From positions 4,216,001 to 4,280,000 of the forward strand of contig JBLDXI010000015.1 in assembly GCA_047495785.1 (NCBI GenBank): a DNA stretch of 64,000 nt. Direction: 5' to 3'. This stretch comes from Lepidodermella squamata (taxonomy: Eukaryota; Animalia; Gastrotricha). Shown here one piece after another: positions 4,001 through 61,300 of this stretch (position 1 is the stretch's first letter; each line of letters starts with the position of its first letter). The notes beneath the pieces are model-generated. The model worked only from the letters and a program-made list of their open reading frames with translations. It was not told the origin of the DNA and searched no databases. The position numbers and the translations under genes were made by a program.

Positions 4001-7000
4001 GCGAAGATTCGCCGCCAGTTGTTTACATCGTCAACACACGTCTCTGATCAGACTTCGAACATTAAATTTAGCGAATAATGGCATGACAAGTTTCGTGTTT
4101 GAATCATCCACCGCGCCTGGAATCACCCAGCTTGATTTGAGTTCGAATAAATTTACAGCGTTGCCACAATCGCTGACTCAGCTGCAAAATTTGTCGGTTT
4201 TGAACGTGTCAAACACTCTGATAACAACACTTCCACCTGAACTGTCCCGCCTGAACCGGCTGTGGAGTCTTGAAATATCCAACTGCCCGTTATCAGGCGA
4301 ACTGGGCGCATTAGCTCGAGGCAAAGTAAGAACTGCTGACATCATCTACCACTTGCGGGCATCATTGGACAGGGCCCGTCTTCGGCCTATAACTCGGCTA
4401 TTGGTGTGTGGCTTTCCAGGTTCTGGGAAGTCGAGTTTGATCGACGTGTTGAAACGAGCTGCGAGCACTACAACGCCCCCGCCAGGGCATCAGAATAACT
4501 CGGATTTGTCTCAGGTAAAATTGATTTTCAATTTATCGTTATATAATTCCAATTTCGAGGCGTTCTCAGTATAAAGCTGAAAGTTCGCTAACTTAATCTT
4601 TGCAGCTGTACATTTTTTAGCTGTCAGAAATAATTTTTTTTGAAGATTTCGAGCTCCTGAAATTGATACCGCATTTGTTCCAATAGCAGCCCGGGCTTCT
4701 AAAATTTCAACCTCAAAATTTTGAAAAATTCGAAAATCAATTTTCGGCGAATCGCTCATTTTTTATGTTTTCGAACCGACTTGACCCATCAACCCTGGGC
4801 TACTAGTGGAACACATACGGTATTAAAAATAGAAAACAGCAATGATGTTTTTTGGCTGGGTTTAATCAAGCGAACAAATGTTGATTTTATCGAGTTTGCT
4901 CGTGGTGTAAACATGATCATCTGAATTCATGGCCATCGCTTGTGCGTCAATGCCTGTTATATGAAGCCACAATTGAAAATGGCTGTAATTTTACCGTGTT
5001 GATAGTGTCAAATTGAGTTTGTGAAGTTGTAATTGAAAATTTAATACGCGCTAGCGAATGTTCAAAACTCGATAAAAAAATCTATACCTGATACATCGTT
5101 CAGCTGTGGCTAAGAGAATAATAATGGCTACTCAATATGGTGTAAAATTTATGAGCCAAAGGCCAGTTTTATGCGCAATTCCTATTTTTCAGCTGCTCAA
5201 CTGCATGTTTTTTGTTGCAAACAGACGAACGTGATAAGAATGCGAAGTTACATCACGTCGAGCGCGTGTTTTTATTTCACATTTGTCTCAAACAATTTTT
5301 TCAAGTTTTTTGAATGAAGATGAATGATGATAACGACAATAACAGTATTTATATAACCACGAGAAATTAGGTCTCTACTTTACAGACTGAAAGCATGGCA
5401 CATTTGAAAAGGTAAATATATTATAGCGATAGAAATCCAGTTTGAGATTCGTACTCACGTAAATTTTGGTTTATATTAATGCGAAATAGTGGTACAAAGT
5501 TGTATAGTTCGCCGCCGCTATAATAAGAAGATTATGACTCGAAAAACACATGACGCGGCGCATTATGAAGAGTGGCCAAATCAGCGAAATGTCCCTCGCG
5601 CTGTTGTTGAAATGATACGAAATGAGTGAAGCAAACAATAAAGTAAAAATAGCTAAAAATTTAGCGTTAATTGTCGATATATCACCAAAGCCGCGACGAT
5701 TAAAATCGTCGTACCAATGGCGATGGCAAGTGTTGAGAGCAGCAGACTTGCGGCGTGAGTGATTCTTTGCCGTTTCGATTCTGAGTTATTTTGGCACGCG
5801 AGGACTAAACTGGGGATGGCGAGCGGCAGGCAGCCGAAAACTAGCGATATCAGCGCGTAGCCTATGGCGAATCGCCGTTCGCTTTTCGTGATTTCAGGCC
5901 GGAGGACAGCTCCGTTCTGGAAAACGAAGGGCACGTTGCGTTGTAAATACGCGGCATAATCATCGCGAAAGTTGAGAAATTGCAAGTTCGACGTTGATTG
6001 AACGCTATTCCTCGAGGCCGATTGCTCGCCGCTGCGACTCTTCTTCAAACTAGCCAGCGAGTGGTAGATGACGTTATTCGTTAAGGTAGCACCTTTCTCC
6101 GCAGGTGGCGGCCGATTGTTGTTCAGGTTGAACGTGACTGAATAAATATTTTCGTTTTGCGATATCCGAGGTTGCGGCTGCACTATTTGCGGTAGCGCAT
6201 TTTTTGACGCGTTTTCGATATTCATGACAGGGAAGTGAAACGGGTTGGTGATGAATGCGCTAGGTATGTTCAACACCTCCGTGCTACCTGCTATTACGGC
6301 CGTTTCATCATCGCGCTCGGCCATAGGTAGGTAATAAAAAACACGGCACTCGATTCACCTAGAGGTAAGATAATAAGATGTTGCGATAAGTGCTTAGTGA
6401 AAAATGATTAAAAACAGCCGTTAATGCAGAGGTTTTTTGATTAAAATTTCATGTAAACACGGACGGTTGCTGGTCAAAAATAAATCCTCGAGTTGATAAA
6501 TTGAAGCGGTAGAAGAGCGGGTGACTTAGTGTGTATGTGTTTTATAAAAAGGAAAAGCACCCGAAATTATTAATATAAAAATGAAAACATAATTTGAAAT
6601 GGCGCTGGGCGACTTAATTCTACTACCTGTGCTGCAGCGTGTATTATTTTTCACTTGAGAATAAACGAGCGCGTTGAAAGGAGATTCGGGCAACCGACCG
6701 GACGACGCGCTAACAGCATAAATAAATAGCGCGCGGCCCTATTATAGCGCTACCTTAAAATATCGCGCGCGCGCGAGCGACAGAACGTGTTTGCGTCGTT
6801 CTTCGTCGAAAAATCGATGCACACGCGCGTAGACAAACAACTGGCGATGATGATGATGTTGATGGACAGCGATGCCAGTTTGGCCGGTTAATATAAGCAT
6901 ATTGTTATTACACGAGCCTTAAAGTCGCAAAATATAGAGACGTTGCGTTGGGGACGACGAACAGCGGAACTTCATTTGCTTTTTAATATAACAAGTGTTT

Positions 7001-39526: not shown

Positions 39527-39926
39527 TATATACCGAAAAACTCTAAAAAACAATCGAATTCATAAAAACGTTTCTTTTATTATTGTTTTTTGGTTTTTCA
39601 CAGTTACCGCCGAAATCGCCGGCACGAAGAACACCACAACCACGACAGCACGAAAAAGAGAGAACTAGAAATTGATTAGAGACAAGAACAGACAATAAAC
39701 GCGGTCGTTTCTTAAACGACTCGTCATTTTTCAGCAAGATAAATTTAGCAGTCTGAGATGGAATTACAATATAATAATATTATTATCGGAAATTCACAGC
39801 GTTAACATCTTCAATGGTTCATTCGGCTTTACACATTTATATCACCCTTGAAACAAACACCTAGTTTTAAATTGCCATTGCATTGCTTGCCTCGGACTGG
39901 TTGTGTAACGGCTTGTAACGAGGCGA

Positions 39927-41662
39927 TTACTTGAACAAGAAGCTGTACGGGTAGCCGCCGTACTTCGACCGGAAAATCGAAATCAGGAAACTGAAGAAGA
40001 CGCAGTACAAGCTGATACCAGCGATCGCCAACACTATTATTCAAAATTGAGATTTTTCATCGGTTATGTTCGTTTGCTCACCTTTCTTCCGGGTAGCGTC
40101 TTTCACGTTGTTAACCTCGTACAGCAAGATCATACCCAATGTGATGAGCATATCTGAAAAATTGAAATAATTAGCCAAAGTCTTCCCGAATTAATGCCAC
40201 TTCTTGCCATAAAAATCCCCGAATACTCGAGATTTTTACGGCGACGAAGTGCAAATGGCTTGAAGCTACCAGATTGTAAAAGTGACGCGGCTCAGGTGAG
40301 AAATATGTGCATTAAATGACAAGATGGAAAAGTGTTATCTCTGTTGATTGAACACATGTGAAACGAGAAAAATGATATTAATTCCCAGTTAATTAAGTTA
40401 ATTTAAAGCACCCGAAAAAGCAGAGATAGATACCGTAAAATTTGAGTAACAGATATAGTTATCACATGAACTAAGTAGGGTAACATATAACAAAGCCTCG
40501 CGTATTTACAAATTGTGGCGATAATGATCGTTTCGGCGACGAATTGCCCGTCCTCATTGGGTAGAATGTACAGCTGAAAGAAAACGGGAAGAAAAATTAT
40601 CGGATGAAGGTGCAAGGTATAAAGAGCCAGACACGTCACTTTTAATCTAATAGTTCAGCCTTAAAATTTATTCGAGAAAAATTACAGTGGAAAAAGATGA
40701 TGTAACTCTCCGCAACAAACTGGAACTGAGTGCTGCCGCTGAAATAGCCCTTTACAATACAATAAAATTGTTATGATTTCCGCCCAAAAATAATTGAAAA
40801 CTATCGCAATAGAATTTGTTGAACGAAGCTCAAGTTTACTTACCATAGCGCCAGTCTGCTGGTTGCGATGCATGAACGGAGGTCCTCGAATTTGATTCCA
40901 CATTTGACCAGAGATCATGCAGAAAATGATGGCCTAACAACGTCACATTTATTGAAAATCCACAATTAACTCTTTGCAACGTACCATTACGGACATTCCC
41001 CAAATCTGCTTACTGTACAAAAATTCCAGGCTGTTACGTTTGACGTAAAGCATCAATCCAACCAAGCCGACAAGCATCATAACAGCGAGGGTTCCTGAAT
41101 AGTTTGGCGGACGGAAGATGCGAACATTCAATTCGGTTCTATCCGACACCCATTTTCCAATATTTTCAGCCTCGAAACCGATGCGCTGAATGTCCATCGT
41201 ATCTTGAGTACGAGGCTTGGCAGTTTTGGGCGGGAAATGGATGAAAACCGGAACTGATTGAAGGCTCATTTGTTGGAAAGCGTCCATGTTATCGTCAAAG
41301 TCAGCAATAGCAAAGAATAACCGACCGGGATTGCTTTGGCTGGACAAATAATGCCACGAATTGGCTACAATTTGGAATTCTTCTGTTGCTTGTTTGCAAA
41401 TCGAACAGCCTCGCTGAGGAGCGTTTGCTGTGAACATAACAACCACCGAATAGTTTTTGTGTTGAGTTTTGACGTAGTTTTTGAAGCGGTCGTTATTTAG
41501 CTTAATCATGGGTCGTGATTGAGACCATTCCGTCATCTGTTCAACTTTTTCGACGTATAGATCGTTCACATCAACGGCAGCAGCAGCAGAACCTCCTCGG
41601 CCAGCAGCCCAAGCAGTACCGCAGGCGATAACGCCAAGCAAGAGTCCAATTATTAACTTCAT
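39927..41662 (-). CDS. TUSC3: Oligosaccharyltransferase OST3/OST6 subunit (TUSC3/MAGT1) with alternative exon 3a/3b
   Basis: Thioredoxin-like [38 protein letters not shown]. Exons 41662-~40984, 40933-40844, [40749-40686 or 40573-40510], 40153-40082, 40033-39927. Confidence 0.93.
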
Positions 41663-41846: not shown

Positions 41847-42425
41847 TTAAAGAGCACCTAAATAGTCTTCAGCTAGCTTTCGGTAATAATTCAGATCCGG
41901 AGTTATCGCATTTGGATCTTTGGCTTGCTCATCAATATTACGAACAGCGAGAATAGCACTAAGATACAAATGATTGCCAAACTCCATGGCTTCTTCTTCA
42001 CTCATGGGACCGCCTTGTAGTTTCAAAGTTTCAACACTAGCAGGTGTCAACTTGGCCATATATCCCTTGTTAACTGCTACTCTGAAACGCTTTGCGTTCA
42101 CATGATGACGGATTAAGTCGGAGACCGCAGTGGGGAATCCAACTCGTTCCACATAATCAGCACCAAGATTCTCATGATTCACCGATCCCAATATGACACC
42201 ATCGGGCGCAACTAACTCTGGCAAGCCCAATTCGAATCCCAGCAGATGACCAATGTCGTGGAACAGAGCAGCTAAAACAACAGTTGGGTCGTAACCACTC
42301 TTTTCCGCAATAGATGCAGCCTGAAGGCTATGTTGAAGGAATGTAACAGGTTCGCCGATATAAAGGGAATTTCCATGCTTTTCGAACAACGCAAACAACG
42401 CATCGATGGTAGAAGGATAAGTCAT
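41847..42425 (-). CDS. PhnZ/TmpB-like HD-domain diiron oxygenase (phosphonate C-P cleavage), intronless
   Basis: YIGEPVTFLQHSLQAA, AALFHDIGH, NHENLGA, HHVNAKR, ASVETLKLQGGPM and DEQAKDP match the PhnZ motif series. Confidence 0.85.
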   Translation of the reverse strand: MTYPSTIDALFALFEKHGNSLYIGEPVTFLQHSLQAASIAEKSGYDPTVVLAALFHDIGHLLGFELGLPELVAPDGVILGSVNHENLGADYVERVGFPTAVSDLIRHHVNAKRFRVAVNKGYMAKLTPASVETLKLQGGPMSEEEAMEFGNHLYLSAILAVRNIDEQAKDPNAITPDLNYYRKLAEDYLGAL

Positions 42426-42774
42426 TTTGCTACAATCACGATTAAGATAGGTATCAACAACTGAAAAGAAAAGATATATTACTAATAATGATACATCAGT
42501 TAGAAAAGTAAGCACAGACAACATTTAGACATGTTGCTTTTAGCTGTTATAGCTGTTAGCTGTCAAATGGGGGAGGGTGGGAGAAGTTTCAAAGTTTTCG
42601 ATTCAACAACACGAGAGGATACCTGGGAGCCTTGGACTCATAAGTCAAAAATGCTCAACGTACGCCTATCCGATGGACCGCAGTTACTTGAACATACGGG
42701 ATCCGGGAGCCGGCAAACTGCGAGTGCAAGTTGACCGGTCAAAAATAGTCAAACGAAGTCTGCACAGGTGGAAG

Positions 42775-44739
42775 CCTGCCTGCCTGCCTGCCCTCATAAC
42801 TAGGGAACCTCAGGATCCCTAGAAAGCAAATTAGATCATTGGGCAGAGGAAAGCCCTATTGTCAAAGGTAATTTGCCAATCCTCAGACAGTAGTTTGAAT
42901 GGCTGTGCTAACTATTTTCTCCAGACGTTTGAAGAAAATTAAGGTATTTTTTACAATTCTATTGTCAGCACTAAGCAGCCTTGCAGGGTCGTGGCCAGCA
43001 ACAGATAAACAGTCGTAAGAAATATGGTAGGCTAACTGGCTCAGAGGAGTAACGTTACCACAGAACATACATGTAACATCATCAATTCTGAAAATAAAAT
43101 GTTCGATACGGCGAAAGACGGTGTTCGTGACGACTCGCAGAGCAGTATTTCTAAGGTCAGGTGGATAATTTTCGAATATCTTACTAATGCCAAAGTAACC
43201 GTCCCTGGCTAATAGGTAGCTGGCATTATATTTATTATGAAATTTGACAGATAGTTCAGAAACATAGCAGTCTTTGACTAGGTTGAAAAATTGCTCCATG
43301 ACTGCCGGGTCACGCATAAACCAGAAGTCGGGAGGCAGATTGTAGGATAATAGAAATTTACGAGTTGCGTGGATGGGATTTAAGACACCCATCTTCGGAC
43401 GAGAATGGAAGTAAAAAGAAAAAGCATCATTCACTAAGGGGTTGGCACATTTCGTCAGCTCACATGTAAACTTGACTGCATTGAGTTTCGCCTTTAGGCT
43501 AGGGGGAATAAGTCCCATAACAAAACCAGTTGATAAACTAGACGCATTGTACGGAATGTCGCGCGCTCTTTTATAATACTTATAACAGACGCTGTCCAAT
43601 TTAGCAACACGGCTAGGGGCGAAGAGGCCCCAGAGTTCGGAGCCTGCAAGCATCGCCGCTTCAATTTTGCTACAAAATAGTGTATCCAAGTTATTGCGTT
43701 CTATCATACTCAATTTGATCCTATGAGAGGAAAGAGCGTTGTAACAGCTATTGCCACGTGTAAGCGCATTTTCAATAGCTTCAAACCAGCTCAAGTCGCT
43801 GGATATCGGTACGCCTAGGTAGAAATCAGATTTTACAACTTTGAGAGGTACGCCGTTCATATTAAAGGAGTAACGGTCAGGTGAAACAGGAGCTTGGGAA
43901 AAAATGATAACTTTCGTTTTACCGGGGTTAGGGCTGAGCCCTTCTCTAGTAGAATACGTCGACATAGCATCAATCTGTATTTGCAAATCCACCGCGTTAG
44001 TTGCAGTGGGTGTGGAGTCGTCCGCATATAATACGCAAAGTACCTTGGTAGAAAGTAACTTAGGAATGTCTGATAGATTTTTGGCATTCTCAGCCAGATG
44101 AAGAGGCAAATCGGCGGTATACAGATTGTACATTAGGGGACCTAAGACGTCACCCTGTCTAACACCGCGTTCAATGGCGATGTCTGCAATAGACAGTTTG
44201 CTGCCAACTCGCACTTTGGCTTTAGCGTCGGAATAGAGAGAGTTCAATCTCTTGGCAAAGGAAGATGAGATACCTAATCGCTGGCATTTCCATATAAGAC
44301 GGTTGTGAGGAACGCAGTCGAAAGCTTTAGTAAAGTCGATTAAACATATAAAGAGCATTCTACCGCGAACGTGGATTTGGTACGTCGCCAACGACTGAAG
44401 GACGAAAGCCGCGTGTAAGCGCGATAATCCTTTTTCGAAACCAAACTGCTCTTCAGGTATGATCGAGTGAATTCTACACCACTTTTCCAGTCTCAATTTC
44501 AGTATAGTAGAATAAGTTTTGTATATTACGGATAAAAGAGATAATGGCCGGTAGTTGTCCGGCTTAGAGGAGTCACCTTTTTTGAACAAGGTGCAAAACA
44601 GAGACAAATTTAGTCCCGATGGCAGGGTGTAGCTAAGGAAACACGGTTCAAAAATTTTAAAGAGCGTCTTGCTGAAAAAAGAAACATTCAGGTCACTGTG
44701 TTGCATGAATTCAGCTGTAATACCATCCGGGCCGGGCGC
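42775..44739 (-). mobile_element. 5'-truncated non-LTR retrotransposon with an intact RT ORF and a 10-bp TSD
   Basis: APGPDG, YRPLSLLS, QFGF, DFTKAFD, GVRQGDVLGP, YADD and a C-terminal CxxC..H..C. CAGGTGGAAG is duplicated at 42765-42774 and 44740-44749. (GGCA)n tail and a 3' hairpin at 42800-42822. Confidence 0.93.
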
Positions 44740-45340
44740 CAGGTGGAAGGTGGCTATGCGCTCAAATCCCACTATGCGCGCGGTTTGCCGAACATTTGAG
44801 GACCAAAAATATGTTTGTTCTTTTCCTAATTATATTGCTGAAAATTATTTGCAGAATCATTATCAAGACTTTCACAGTATATCTGTTGGGTGACCTTGAG
44901 ACGACCTTGACAGCTCAATTTTCATTTTCTGCGCGATTTTCGTTCCATCAGTCAGCGCGATGTTAGCCGGGATTCCACCTGAGCCTGACTGACAGTAAGG
45001 CACAATGCGCGATGCACTTTCACCACTTCTGTACCGTATCGTTACCTTCTCCATGGAACTTAAAATGTAGAGCTTCGTGAATTCATCGTAGATATCAGGT
45101 TATTCTCGGTTATTCTCTGGCGTAGCAGTCACCGCCAATCTTGAACATTTGAATACGCAGTCGGCAGGTTCATGCTTGTGTTTTATTTCATCTTAGTTTT
45201 ACGACGGGGTCAGCGCCCGAGAGACGCTGATCGATTGTAAACATTCACTTGAGCCAAATACTTTCTCCTTCAACTTGTGAGATCATAATATCCTAAATGA
45301 TTCTTACGCAGATTGCAGGCTTACGCATTATTGATATCAA

Positions 45341-58386: not shown

Positions 58387-61300
58387 TGTAATTATGGCGT
58401 CGCGATGAACAAAGAAATCAGCGATTAGGCTTTGCAACCATCTCTTCGATGAGCTTTGGTACGTTTAGAAGACGCTTTAGCTCAGATAAATCGACAAATG
58501 CGTCAGTGCTGGGGTTTTGCGATGTACATTCGACCGCGCCGTAGAAAAATAGCTCGCTGCTTCTGGTATTTTTTACTATTTCATAATGTGTTGAAGTATA
58601 GGAATGGATTGTTTTGATTACTCGCAATGTTAGTCTGTTGTAAAACTGATGAAGATGCTGATAATAGCGCTGATAATAACATCTACAATAATAGTAATAT
58701 TCATTCCACAATTGAAAGCAATGCTCAATGATGAACTAATAGCACCGGACAATGTCTGCTAAAAACAGCAGAAAAGATAATGCCAAATTTGCAGCGGTCA
58801 GCAGTCAGCTTACATCGCATATCTCCAGTAGCGAAATTGTGTGAGCGCAAAGCGTATCAATGAGCTGCAAGGAAAAGAGATCGACCAACATCCGCCAAAT
58901 ATCTATAGGTATAGTAATATTGAACTGTGCGTTAACATGCCGGCAAATCGAAAAATAATAGGTTCAAGACCGACTTTACAGCCGGTTCATGTGCAGATGC
59001 AGTTTGTTGCCGTAAACATGTCACAATATTATTTTCGACAATAAAAACTCTTAAGAGCAAAAAAATCACCATCAAAGAAAAATTATTGGTCTGAACGCTT
59101 CGGCGATTTTATTATGTGCGCCAGCGTTACCGGTTGAAAATACCGCTTATAAACAGCTGGTCATAAAACGTGATTTTTTGGTATTTTTACGAGAAATATA
59201 TGCACCTGAAGGCCTACAGATGTGATTGATGTATAAGATGTGAGACTTGATAGCATTTATTTAACGATCTCATTCCTTATGTATTGTCATTGGAAATGGA
59301 TATTATTCTAAGAACAGGCAATATAACATTTTTATGATACTGCGCTGAGAGTCTAATCTTTGACACCTGAAAGGTAAAACTTACTTCGTCGTATTTTAGG
59401 GTAATTTAATGGGCGTCGTCAGCGAAATATGACATTAAGAAAATGAAATTTCAAAATATCAAGTCAATTGACTGTTCTGAATAAGATCGGGTTATTATGA
59501 ACTACTTCTTGAATAGAGAGTGTCGTTATAATGAAGAGGCGTAATTTACGCAGACATTTTTCGACTAGTCTGAGGCTTTTCAAAATTAAATTGGATATAA
59601 TAGCGTCCACCCAGCCGCCCGCGCGGCGACGACAAGAAAAAACAAGCATTGTCCCATGCATCGGTCGTGTTTAGTTCGATAATAAACGGGTGGAATAAAC
59701 ATATCGAATGCACGGCGCATGACACATACAAACACTTGGGTTGCGGAAAAGAAGTCCCGTCCTGCTCGTCGTCACGTAGGGAAGCACGCGGTATCGGGCG
59801 AAAAGTGCGCACTCGAATAGCTCTCATCCGGAACGTTATCAGCGATAGCACGCGAGACATGTACACGTATATACATAGCTGGGCCACAAATCGCTTGTTA
59901 TATATAAAAGTAAAAAACTTTTTAATACATGCGATGAATCGAATCACAACTAAATGACATGTACACGGGCGTAATAAAGGAACTGGAAACGTGATTAAAT
60001 TTCGGCGCTCTCTTGTGCTGAGAAGGCACCGACGTCGCCTGTGGGGCCGGTCTGCAGTAATATTTAAATACAGACGATGAGATACTCCACTACTGGCTAT
60101 CGCAGTGCTCCTGTAAGTATGCGGCGAAGCATCGCTAAGATCTGACGTATTTATTTGCCAATCGCGCGACATGGGCTAAATCGAGAGCATTGGTTTTCTA
60201 TACATATCTCAACATTTTCGAAAATACATCTTAAGAGCAGGTGATGGATGACATCAGAACACCGGCCGCTAACATGGCATGTCATTTCGAAGACGCCATC
60301 GATGACGCGCATAGAGCTCTTCGGGTTTATGCTCGCAGTAATATGATAAAATGCAGAAAATTGAATAAAACTTTGAATTTTGAAATCAAAATCAATGCAA
60401 AAACACGAGACGAGACCAGTATAAATATCAAAATTATATGCTAAACAGTCGAGCGATTTTTTATACGATATATACGATAGTAAGGTTTTCGCATTAATAT
60501 ACGGCATCGCGTGACAAGACACCGTTTCGCGTTCGTGAAATCTATTAATCTTTTAATACTGCGACTTCTCTACGCGTAGACTTGCTAATATAATGAGACT
60601 AATGCAAGCCAGGGCCGGCCGGTTATTTCATGTGCGCAAAATCTTGTTATCGAAAAAAATTCGGGGCACCATTTAATTCAGGCCAGATTCTGCCAATAAC
60701 AAGAAGGAATCAGGCAATCTTTTGATAGCGATTTATGCTAGCAAATAGTCCAAATCGAGTGCGAAATTTCGGACAAAATTCTCATATCCTCTCAGTACCA
60801 GAAGAGCTACATCGCGCGTCGAAAGAAGCAGTGCGCTGTTTTCCTCGTTTAGTTTGAGACAATACATTCGGTTGAAATTTTAAATTAAAAAATGACAGGA
60901 ATTCCTATGAAGTATGCAAAGAGCTATGATATCATGTTCCATCAGTGCGATAACAAAAGAAAAAATGGATCACTGGCACTATATACTATCAATATGTATC
61001 CCTCGGGATCTCCGCGTAACATATTAGTATTTTTAAATAGAGCATTGAAATGACCCTTTATTAGTCACATTCTGCTTAATTACATGGCGCGAGACCCTCG
61101 GTGTCGATACCACAACGTTATTATCGACTTTACTGGTGCCGAACAACTCCCAACGCCGAGCCCAAATAGCGCGCGAGCTGAAAAGTTCAATTGCGGCAAT
61201 TGAACTTTTCAGCTCGCGCATGCCGAAAGCCTCTTTCATTTAATTGGATGTGTGTCATGCTAAGATGAATGGAGCATGCAACTTGCGCGGTAGATATATT

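What the first reader, a model, noticed from the sequence alone, without database searches (positions are those of the whole stretch)
40271..40648. Complementary intronic elements bracket exon 3b: candidate RNA-pairing switch
Sense AGAUU-AAAAGUGACGUG-UCUG-GCU (40648-40625, between 3a and 3b) can pair with AGC-CGCGUCACUUUU-AC-AAUCU (40292-40271, downstream of 3b). The duplex has a 12-bp core with one G-U pair plus two flanking helices. Pairing would loop out 3b and bring 3a close to exon 4, like the docking/selector pairing known for Dscam and 14-3-3 exon clusters. These introns are also far longer than the local norm.
Basis: partly seen in the sequence, partly recalled or inferred. Interest (0 to 1): 0.75.

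Follow-up and report, generated by a model that had tools for sequence, protein, structure and literature searches.

The report
Intron stem loops out alternative exon
Two intron stretches on either side of one of two alternative exons of an OST3/TUSC3 (protein-glycosylation) gene can zip into a strong 33-base-pair RNA stem that probably helps the cell skip that exon, but nothing yet shows that it is conserved or works as a switch.

Summary
The complementarity is real and larger than reported. The arms are 40660-40624 and 40293-40257 (minus strand): 33 bp, -39.8 kcal/mol. In a fold of the 1-kb pre-mRNA the stem is in the minimum-energy structure, with pair probabilities mostly above 0.9. It beats all 240 dinucleotide shuffles and 399 of 400 GC-matched genomic controls.

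The stem encloses exon 3b with both its splice sites in a 330-nt loop. That cuts the 532-nt 3a-to-4 intron to about 128 unpaired nt.

RNA contigs from three runs join 3a directly to exon 4. None shows 3b, although 3b has the best polypyrimidine tract of the gene and evolves like coding sequence.

This fits a loop-out/approximation stem like stem II of Drosophila srp. It is not a docking/selector switch:
- No competing pairing exists (intron 2 against either intron is at chance).
- No 3b-containing RNA was seen.
- The only relative found (83% protein identity, synonymous sites near saturation) has a 35-nt 3a-3b intron and no pairing, so it probably relies on steric exclusion.

There are no covariation data, so a neutral inverted repeat is not excluded. 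Earlier notes of this scan report intron stems at other alternative-exon clusters of this genome (HPRT, CD109). Verdict: a plausible new member of a known kind, of moderate interest.

The parts
40624..40660 (-). Arm 1 of the long-range duplex, in the intron between exons 3a and 3b. It starts 25 nt after the 3a donor and ends 50 nt before the 3b acceptor.
   Evidence: unique in the window
40257..40293 (-). Arm 2 of the duplex, in the intron between exon 3b and exon 4. It starts 216 nt after the 3b donor and ends 103 nt before the exon 4 acceptor.
   Evidence: no haplotype variant inside it, although 7 SNPs and 1 insertion lie in the adjoining 77 nt
40686..40749 (-). Exon 3a (64 nt), the form found in RNA. 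Weak acceptor tract (11 of 20 pyrimidines).
   Evidence: joints 40843->40748 and 40686->40153 in runs X2 and X3 (the first also in X4)
40510..40573 (-). Exon 3b (64 nt), the alternative copy that lies inside the loop. It has AG/GT borders and the strongest acceptor tract of the gene (19 of 20 pyrimidines). No RNA joint to it was seen.
   Evidence: coding-type conservation against L001 (identity by codon position 13/12/6 of 21)
40574..40685 (-). Intron 3a-3b, 112 nt (35 nt in relative L001)
40154..40509 (-). Intron 3b-4, 356 nt (88 nt in relative L001)
40082..40153 (-). Exon 4 (72 nt), the constitutive acceptor exon joined to 3a
   Evidence: joints
40844..40933 (-). Exon 2 (90 nt), the constitutive donor exon upstream of the pair
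   Evidence: joints
40308..40344 (-). Weaker alternative partner of arm 1 in the same intron (-17.1 kcal/mol). It would also loop out 3b.
   Evidence: (pair I4)
40547..40588 (-). Local 9-bp hairpin that pairs the 3b polypyrimidine tract with exon 3b and leaves the acceptor AG in a 24-nt loop. A possible second brake on 3b.
   Evidence: pair probabilities above 0.96 in the 1007-nt fold, but z only -1.76 on its own
40231..40252 (-). Possible remnant of a decayed third exon copy, directly 3' of arm 2. It matches 18 of 22 nt of exon 3b 40547-40526.
   Evidence: 1 of 1000 shuffles with the exon as query; weaker when the flanks are included (48 of 500)

Best explanation
The gene is an OST3/TUSC3/MagT1-type oligosaccharyltransferase subunit on the minus strand. 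It has two tandem 64-nt alternative exons, 3a and 3b. Using both or neither shifts the reading frame.

In the pre-mRNA, a 37-nt stretch 25 nt downstream of the 3a donor pairs with a 37-nt stretch 216 nt downstream of the 3b donor. This makes a 33-bp stem. Exon 3b, its branch region and both its splice sites sit in the 330-nt loop.

Inferred mechanism: once arm 2 is transcribed, the stem forms. It shortens the 532-nt 3a-to-4 intron, ten times the local norm, to about 128 unpaired nt, and it puts the strong 3b acceptor in a separate loop. Together these favour the 3a-4 splice, suppress 3b inclusion and suppress the frameshifting 3a+3b double inclusion. In this reading it is a one-sided loop-out/approximation stem that sets 3a as the default, like stem II of Drosophila srp. 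Use of 3b would need the stem to be prevented or melted, or 3b to be spliced before arm 2 is made.

Shown here: the sequence, the statistics, the predicted folding, the gene model and the predominance of 3a. Inferred: that the stem forms in vivo and causes the skipping.
For: - Duplex of 33 bp, -39.8 kcal/mol.
- It is in the minimum-energy fold of the 1007-nt pre-mRNA, with most pair probabilities 0.9-1.0.
- It is the closing stem of both the minimum-energy and the centroid fold of the 404-nt arm-to-arm segment, z -3.3.
- Forcing arm 1 single-stranded costs 22.7 kcal/mol.
- 0 of 240 shuffles and 1 of 400 GC-matched genomic controls are as strong.
- The arms are not a repeat family in the window.
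- RNA contigs of three runs carry the 40686->40153 joint or its equivalent. Depth over 3b is 2.4 against 570-620 over 3a in run X2.
- 3b has the best acceptor tract of the gene (19 of 20 pyrimidines against 9-13) yet is skipped, so something represses it.
- 3b is under coding constraint, with first and second codon positions conserved and the third near random against L001. It is therefore a real exon that needs regulation.
- All three base substitutions between the arms are transitions that keep G-U pairs.
- Mutational work on srp shows that the same geometry promotes the upstream exon by approximation and suppresses the in-loop exon (PMC4691838).
Against: - There is no covariation or conservation evidence.
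- The only relative (L001 and L002, identical here) has a 35-nt 3a-3b intron, an 88-nt 3b-4 intron and chance-level complementarity.
- The two haplotypes of the source are identical across both arms, so they give no test.
- No 3b-containing RNA was seen, so a regulated choice is not shown. The RNA evidence is assembled contigs only, which drop rare forms.
- Scored as DNA without G-U pairs, the repeat is unremarkable.
- Other repressors could explain 3b skipping: a local hairpin at its acceptor, or a pyrimidine-tract-binding protein (inference).
Confidence: 0.5

Rival explanations
1. Neutral inverted repeat. A short stretch was copied in inverted orientation into the neighbouring intron (for example by templated insertion during break repair) or arose during the exon duplications. 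It has not yet decayed. It may or may not fold in vivo, but it is not selected and does not control exon choice. 3b is kept silent by other means: the local acceptor hairpin, a tract-binding repressor, or decay of misjoined RNA.
For: - The elements are absent from the only relative, whose introns are 35 and 88 nt.
- A near-perfect long repeat in otherwise unconserved introns suggests a young origin.
- The 3b-4 intron shows signs of duplication debris: a possible exon remnant at 40252-40231 and a partial second copy of arm 2 at 40344-40308.
- About 1-2% of same-geometry genomic places carry an equally strong duplex without GC matching.
- The rank is ordinary when G-U pairs are not counted.
Against: - Only 1 of 400 GC-matched places is as strong.
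- Its position exactly brackets the skipped exon of an alternative pair.
- All three substitutions between the arms keep pairing.
- A 33-bp stem with a 330-nt loop is predicted to form at probability above 0.9 and would be expected to affect splicing even if it arose neutrally (PMC4691838).
Confidence: 0.3
2. The flanking inverted repeats promote back-splicing of exon 3b into a small circular RNA, not (or not only) linear exon choice.
For: Inverted repeats of about 30-40 nt flanking an exon are enough for circularisation in expression constructs (PMC4201285). The geometry here matches.
Against: - No 'goes back' joint between 40510 and 40573 was found in any run, and depth over 3b is lower than over the intron beside it (contigs only, so this is weak).
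- A 64-nt circle would be unusually small (my own knowledge).
Confidence: 0.05
3. True docking/selector competition as in Dscam or 14-3-3xi. Arm 1 or arm 2 has a second, exon-3b-promoting partner that was missed.
For: The cluster context fits. Arm 1 has a weaker second partner at 40344-40308.
Against: - Intron 2 against intron 3a (-12.6) and against intron 3b (-15.8) is weaker than the shuffle means.
- The second partner lies in the same intron, so the outcome is the same.
- Arm 1 against the exon 3a or 3b edges gives only -12 to -13 kcal/mol.
Confidence: 0.07

Closest known systems
Downstream pairing (stem II, Us-Dd) of Drosophila serpent (srp) exons 4.1/4.2; Yue et al. 2016, PMC4691838
   Same: - Two tandem mutually exclusive exons.
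- One element in the intron between them pairs with one in the intron after the second exon.
- This brings the first exon's donor near the constitutive acceptor and puts the second exon in a loop.
   Different: - srp also has an upstream stem I that competes and promotes exon 4.2; no counterpart exists here.
- The srp stems are conserved among flies and were tested by mutation; here there is neither conservation nor a test.
- The gene and phylum are different.
Docking site/selector sequences of Dscam1 exon 6 and of 14-3-3xi, Mhc and MRP (described in PMC6071210)
   Same: Long-range intronic base pairing inside a cluster of duplicated alternative exons, which loops out non-chosen exons.
   Different: The defining competition of several selectors for one docking site is absent. 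There is only one significant duplex.
Mutual exclusion by a too-short intervening intron (steric hindrance), listed as a mechanism in PMC6071210; related intron-length constraint in OGDH, PMC7969005
   Same: The relative L001 has the same exon pair only 35 nt apart, shorter than any RNA-confirmed intron of this gene (48-94 nt).
   Different: In the window the intron is 112 nt, so steric exclusion probably no longer applies. The stem may do that job instead (inference).
Short flanking inverted repeats that drive exon circularisation (Liang and Wilusz 2014, PMC4201285)
   Same: Inverted repeats of 30-40 nt in the two introns that flank one exon.
   Different: No back-splice joint was seen. The exon is only 64 nt and is one of a frame-coupled alternative pair.
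FGFR2 IAS2-ISAR stem and classical exon loop-out hairpins (cited in PMC4691838 as Muh 2002 and Baraniak 2003; otherwise my own knowledge)
   Same: A single intronic stem acts by approximation and decides between two mutually exclusive exons.
   Different: In FGFR2 both arms lie in the one intron between the two exons and activate the upstream exon. Here the arms lie in two different introns and enclose the downstream exon.

Membership tests
Docking-site/selector competing RNA pairings (Dscam1 exon 6, 14-3-3xi type) | One docking site complementary to two or more selector sequences, each tied to a different variable exon, so that pairings exclude one another | tested here: not met
   There is a single significant duplex. 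Intron 2 against intron 3a or 3b is at or below the shuffle mean. The weak second partner of arm 1 lies in the same intron.
Docking-site/selector competing RNA pairings (Dscam1 exon 6, 14-3-3xi type) | Elements conserved among related species, with compensatory changes | tested here: inconclusive
   Absent from L001/L002, the only relative found. That relative is near saturation at synonymous sites. The haplotypes are identical in the arms. Two metagenome scans found no closer relative.
Bidirectional dual pairing (srp exon 4 type) | Downstream pairing: an element between the two exons pairs with an element after the second exon | tested here: met
   40660-40624 pairs with 40293-40257: 33 bp, pair probability above 0.9, 1 of 400 GC-matched controls as strong.
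Bidirectional dual pairing (srp exon 4 type) | Upstream pairing: an element before the first exon pairs with an element between the exons | tested here: not met
   The best intron 2 x intron 3a duplex is -12.6 kcal/mol against a shuffle mean of -15.2.
Exon loop-out / intron-bridging stem | Complementary intronic segments enclose an alternative exon together with its splice sites | tested here: met
   The 330-nt loop holds the 3b acceptor, the exon and the donor.
Exon loop-out / intron-bridging stem | The enclosed exon is skipped in the mRNA | tested here: met
   The joint 40686->40153 is present in X2 and X3, and its equivalent in X4. There is no joint to 3b, and 3b depth is 2.4 against about 600. 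These are contigs only, and the link is a correlation.
Exon loop-out / intron-bridging stem | Skipping depends on the pairing (disruption and compensation) | not testable with these tools
   This needs a minigene, genome editing or in vivo structure probing.
Inverted-repeat-driven circular RNA | A back-splice junction of the enclosed exon | tested here: inconclusive
   No such joint among the contigs. Raw reads were not available.
Mutually exclusive exon pair (tandem duplicate, frame-coupled) | Same length, homologous, own splice sites, frame lost if both or neither is used | tested here: met
   Both exons are 64 nt with AG/GT borders and share an xY...QFVAE..II motif. With both included a stop appears at residue 284; with neither, at residue 264. 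The pair is also present in L001. Use of 3b in RNA was not shown.

The most novel reading that the evidence does not exclude
Mechanism turnover between two related species. The ancestor kept 3a and 3b apart by a too-short (about 35 nt) intron, as the metagenomic relative still does. In the window's lineage both introns grew, partly through a further exon duplication that then decayed, and steric exclusion was lost. A newly arisen 33-bp long-range stem took over the task of preventing 3a+3b joining and of setting the default exon. This would be a natural example of one way of enforcing mutual exclusivity being replaced by another. It would also show RNA-pairing control of exon choice in a phylum (probably Gastrotricha, according to earlier notes) where none is described.
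Probability: 0.2. Interest if true: 0.65.

Novelty: new member of a known kind. Interest (0 to 1): 0.4.

Why it matters
RNA-pairing control of mutually exclusive exons has been shown by mutation in arthropod genes (Dscam1, 14-3-3xi, srp, Mhc, MRP) and in a few vertebrate genes such as ATE1. My paper searches found no report for TUSC3/MagT1/OST3 genes and none for rotifers; gastrotrichs were not searched. A working stem here would widen the phylogenetic range of the mechanism.

It would also give a compact test system: five short introns and one stem. Paired with the relative that has a 35-nt intron, it would let one ask how a gene changes the way it enforces 'one exon only' when an intron grows.

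It also predicts a rare or conditional 3b isoform, which changes a lumenal loop and the start of a membrane helix in a subunit that selects substrates for N-glycosylation. If the repeat turns out to be neutral, the finding is ordinary.

Tried and rejected
- **Whole-intron RNAduplex energy.** Rejected as a statistic because it chains many small helices. Observed -53.7; shuffles -36.6; genomic places -56.0. I replaced it with the best duplex in 40-nt windows.
- **Whole-window self-BLAST for inverted repeats.** It timed out, as did the first shuffle script. I redid the BLAST in tiles.
- **Repeat family or transposon ends.** The arms occur once in 64 kb with up to 3 mismatches. The 10-nt core occurs only at the two arms.
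- **Known RNA family.** No Rfam match up to E=1 in 39800-41000.
- **Upstream or competing pairing.** None found.
- **Closer relatives.** Two metagenome scans found nothing. The look-alike look-up in earlier findings was blank. The protein word search gave only one genomic relative (P0001, loci L001 and L002, identical here) and one spliced transcript of the 3a form (P0003).
- **Rotifer genes.** Adineta, Rotaria and Brachionus loci (55% identity) have a single 3a-like exon and a different intron layout, so they cannot test the stem.
- **Apparent similarity of arm 1 to exon 3b of L001.** The score of 18 is at chance level.
- **Local hairpin at the 3b acceptor.** Only marginal on its own (z -1.76), and no significant fold in L001.
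- **Haplotype variants as a covariation test.** None lies in the arms.
- **Not done.** Raw-read checks for rare 3b joints, double inclusion or back-splicing were not possible: read laying allows one call and all four runs were contigs.

Full report
**Gene and exon layout**

The finding lies in a minus-strand gene. Its first exon (41662-40985) matches Pfam OST3_OST6 at E 5.6e-54, and its best database relatives are TUSC3/MagT1-type oligosaccharyltransferase subunits.

Reading the sequence and checking frames in a script gives this model:

| Part | Coordinates | Length |
|---|---|---|
| Exon 1 | 41662-40985 | 678 nt |
| Intron 1 | | 51 nt |
| Exon 2 | 40933-40844 | 90 nt |
| Intron 2 | | 94 nt |
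| Exon 3a | 40749-40686 | 64 nt |
| Intron 3a-3b | | 112 nt |
| Exon 3b | 40573-40510 | 64 nt |
| Intron 3b-4 | | 356 nt |
| Exon 4 | 40153-40082 | 72 nt |
| Intron 4 | | 48 nt |
| Exon 5 | 40033 to the stop at 39927 | 107 nt |

- Exons 3a and 3b are each 64 nt. They have AG/GT borders and share a xY...QFVAE..II pattern.
- Either one alone keeps the frame. Both together give a stop at residue 284, and neither gives a stop at residue 264.
- RNA contigs from three public runs confirm the joints 1-2, 2-3a, 3a-4 and 4-5 at exactly these borders.

**The observation**

The complementarity runs further than reported. Arm 1 (40660-40624) and arm 2 (40293-40257) form 33 bp in five helices (4+3+9+12+5), separated by bulges of 1, 1, 2 and 4 nt, at -39.8 kcal/mol.

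- In a partition-function fold of the 1007-nt pre-mRNA from exon 2 to exon 5, the stem is part of the minimum-energy structure. Most of its pairs have probability 0.9-1.0.
- It closes both the minimum-energy and the centroid fold of the 404-nt arm-to-arm segment: z -3.3, 0 of 100 shuffles as good.
- Forbidding arm 1 to pair costs 22.7 kcal/mol.

**Is it more than chance?**

Whole-intron RNAduplex energy proved useless, because it adds up many small helices. I therefore used the best duplex within 40-nt windows. The observed value is -36.2 kcal/mol.

| Control | Result |
|---|---|
| Dinucleotide shuffles of both introns | -19.4 +/- 2.5; 0 of 240 as good |
| Same-geometry places elsewhere in the window | 4 of 240 as good |
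| Same-geometry places matched for GC | -22.1 +/- 3.2; 1 of 400 as good |

- Allowing for the three intron pairs one could have looked at, this is about p = 0.01 against real genomic background.
- A DNA-level score that treats G-U as mismatch ranks the repeat only about 13th-19th among local inverted repeats of the window. Its standing therefore depends on reading it as RNA.
- The arms are unique in the 64 kb and match no Rfam family.

**Geometry**

- Arm 1 begins 25 nt after the 3a donor and ends 50 nt before the 3b acceptor.
- Arm 2 begins 216 nt after the 3b donor and ends 103 nt before the exon 4 acceptor.
- The 330-nt loop holds the 3b branch region, acceptor, exon and donor.
- With the stem formed, the 3a-to-4 intron of 532 nt, about ten times the local norm, is reduced to about 128 unpaired nt.

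**What the RNA shows**

- Runs X2 and X3 carry the joint 40686->40153 (3a to 4, skipping 532 nt). In X4, from a related organism, the contig ends at 40686 and continues with exon 4 letters.
- No contig joins anything to 3b. Depth over 3b in X2 is 2.4, against 570-620 over 3a, and is lower than over the neighbouring intron.
- A spliced transcript of another relative (P0003) is also of the 3a form.
- All four runs were served as contigs, which drop rare forms, so 3b use is unseen, not excluded.
- Yet 3b has the strongest acceptor tract of the gene: 19 of 20 pyrimidines, against 9-13 for the others.
- 3b also evolves like coding sequence. Against the relative L001, identity by codon position is 13, 12 and 6 of 21; for 3a it is 21, 20 and 11.

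So 3b is a maintained exon with good signals that is nevertheless skipped in bulk RNA. Something represses it, and the stem that encloses it is the obvious candidate.

**Comparative evidence**

The only genomic relative I could find is a metagenomic contig pair, L001 and L002, identical in this region. They show 83% protein identity in exon 1 and the same upstream HD-domain neighbour.

- This relative has both exons, each 64 nt. Its 3a-3b intron is only 35 nt and its 3b-4 intron is 88 nt.
- The two introns pair at chance level: -7.3 kcal/mol, with 249 of 500 shuffles as good.
- A 35-nt intron is shorter than any RNA-confirmed intron of this gene (48-94 nt). That species therefore probably keeps the exons apart sterically, a known mechanism (PMC6071210).
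- The stem is thus not ancestral to the exon pair. Third codon positions between the two species are near random, however, so loss of any intronic signal is expected, and this absence says little about function in the window's lineage.
- Rotifer genes (Adineta, Rotaria, Brachionus; 55% identity) have one 3a-like exon only.
- The two haplotypes of the source run differ at 7 SNPs and 1 insertion within 40177-40253. They are identical from 40254 to 41322, so the arms carry no variants and no covariation test is possible.
- The three base differences between arm 1 and the complement of arm 2 are all transitions that keep G-U pairs. This is a weak hint, and it is biased by how folding programs choose alignments.

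**Not a docking/selector switch**

- Intron 2 against intron 3a (-12.6) and against intron 3b (-15.8) pairs worse than the shuffle means.
- Arm 1 against the edges of exons 3a or 3b gives only -12 to -13 kcal/mol.
- The one weaker alternative partner of arm 1 (40344-40308, -17.1 kcal/mol) lies in the same intron and would loop out 3b as well.

There is therefore no competing structure that would favour 3b. The closest described case is stem II of Drosophila srp. There, an element between exons 4.1 and 4.2 pairs with one downstream of 4.2. The pairing is needed for 4.1 inclusion, it acts by bringing sites together, and it suppresses the in-loop exon (PMC4691838). srp also has an opposing stem I, which is missing here.

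**Origin**

The long 3b-4 intron may contain debris of a further exon duplication.

- 40252-40231 matches exon 3b at 18 of 22 nt. With the exon as query this is 1 of 1000 shuffles. With the wider flanks searched it is 48 of 500.
- Arm 2 sits at what would have been that copy's 5' edge.
- This fits the general idea that duplications of exons with adjacent intron generate such pairings (PMC6071210). It fits a neutral by-product equally well.

**Verdict**

- The most likely reading (about 0.5) is a one-sided loop-out/approximation stem that makes 3a-4 the default splice and keeps 3b and the frameshifting double inclusion down.
- A neutral inverted repeat (about 0.3) is not excluded.
- A true competing docking/selector system (0.07) and a circular-RNA role (0.05; PMC4201285) are unlikely.
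- The organism was not identified here. Earlier notes call it probably the gastrotrich Lepidodermella squamata. One note compared it with bdelloid rotifers, but this gene is no closer to rotifers than to other phyla.
- Earlier follow-ups in this genome report intron stems at two other alternative-exon clusters and none at a third. That is context, not evidence.

Noticed in passing
window 40231-40252 (-), with 40526-40547: Possible remnant of a decayed third copy of the alternative exon inside intron 3b-4. It matches 18 of 22 nt of exon 3b, with the FVA codons in the same frame, and has no splice sites left. Arm 2 of the stem abuts its former 5' edge.
   Followed up: partly
window 40547-40588 (-): A 9-bp local hairpin pairs the polypyrimidine tract of the 3b acceptor with a purine run in exon 3b and leaves the AG in the loop. 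Pair probability is above 0.96 in the long fold, but z is only -1.76 on its own. No significant fold was found at this place in L001.
   Followed up: partly
window 40206-40242 (-): A 12-14 bp hairpin lies just 3' of arm 2. The two haplotype SNPs at 40223 and 40227 fall in its loop and none fall in its arms. It would shorten the spacer to the exon 4 acceptor further.
   Followed up: no
window 40177-40253, 41323-41378, 41087-41168: Differences between haplotypes or strains come in dense patches (7 SNPs plus 1 insertion in 77 nt; 4 in 56 nt; 8 in 82 nt) inside otherwise identical sequence. The pattern looks like conversion tracts or a mosaic of diverged copies.
   Followed up: no
L001 1560-2230: The relative lacks introns 1 and 4 of this gene. 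Its introns are 63, 35 and 88 nt, so intron number and length have changed a great deal between two species that share the exon pair.
   Followed up: partly
window 40129/40197 and 40300/40423: RNA-run contigs (X2) show 'opposite strands' joints inside intron 3b-4. The cause is unexplained; it could be an assembly or reverse-transcription artefact at local hairpins.
   Followed up: no
window 4517-4534 and 4727-4744: This inverted repeat was the only one of 400 GC-matched controls stronger (-40.6 kcal/mol) than the finding. It lies in the stretch another note assigns to the LRRK ROC-COR region.
   Followed up: no
window 41850-42524 (-) and 42886-44772 (-): An HD-domain gene lies directly upstream of the OST3 gene, as it does in L001. 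Next to it is a 629-residue reverse-transcriptase ORF (Pfam RVT_1).
   Followed up: partly
window 61171-61219: A perfect 24-nt palindrome with a 1-nt spacer.
   Followed up: no
L004-L007 (Adineta, Rotaria, Brachionus OST3 genes): These rotifer genes have a single 3a-like exon with a different intron position. Several annotated proteins are shortened at the C-terminus (260-291 residues against about 325-335).
   Followed up: partly
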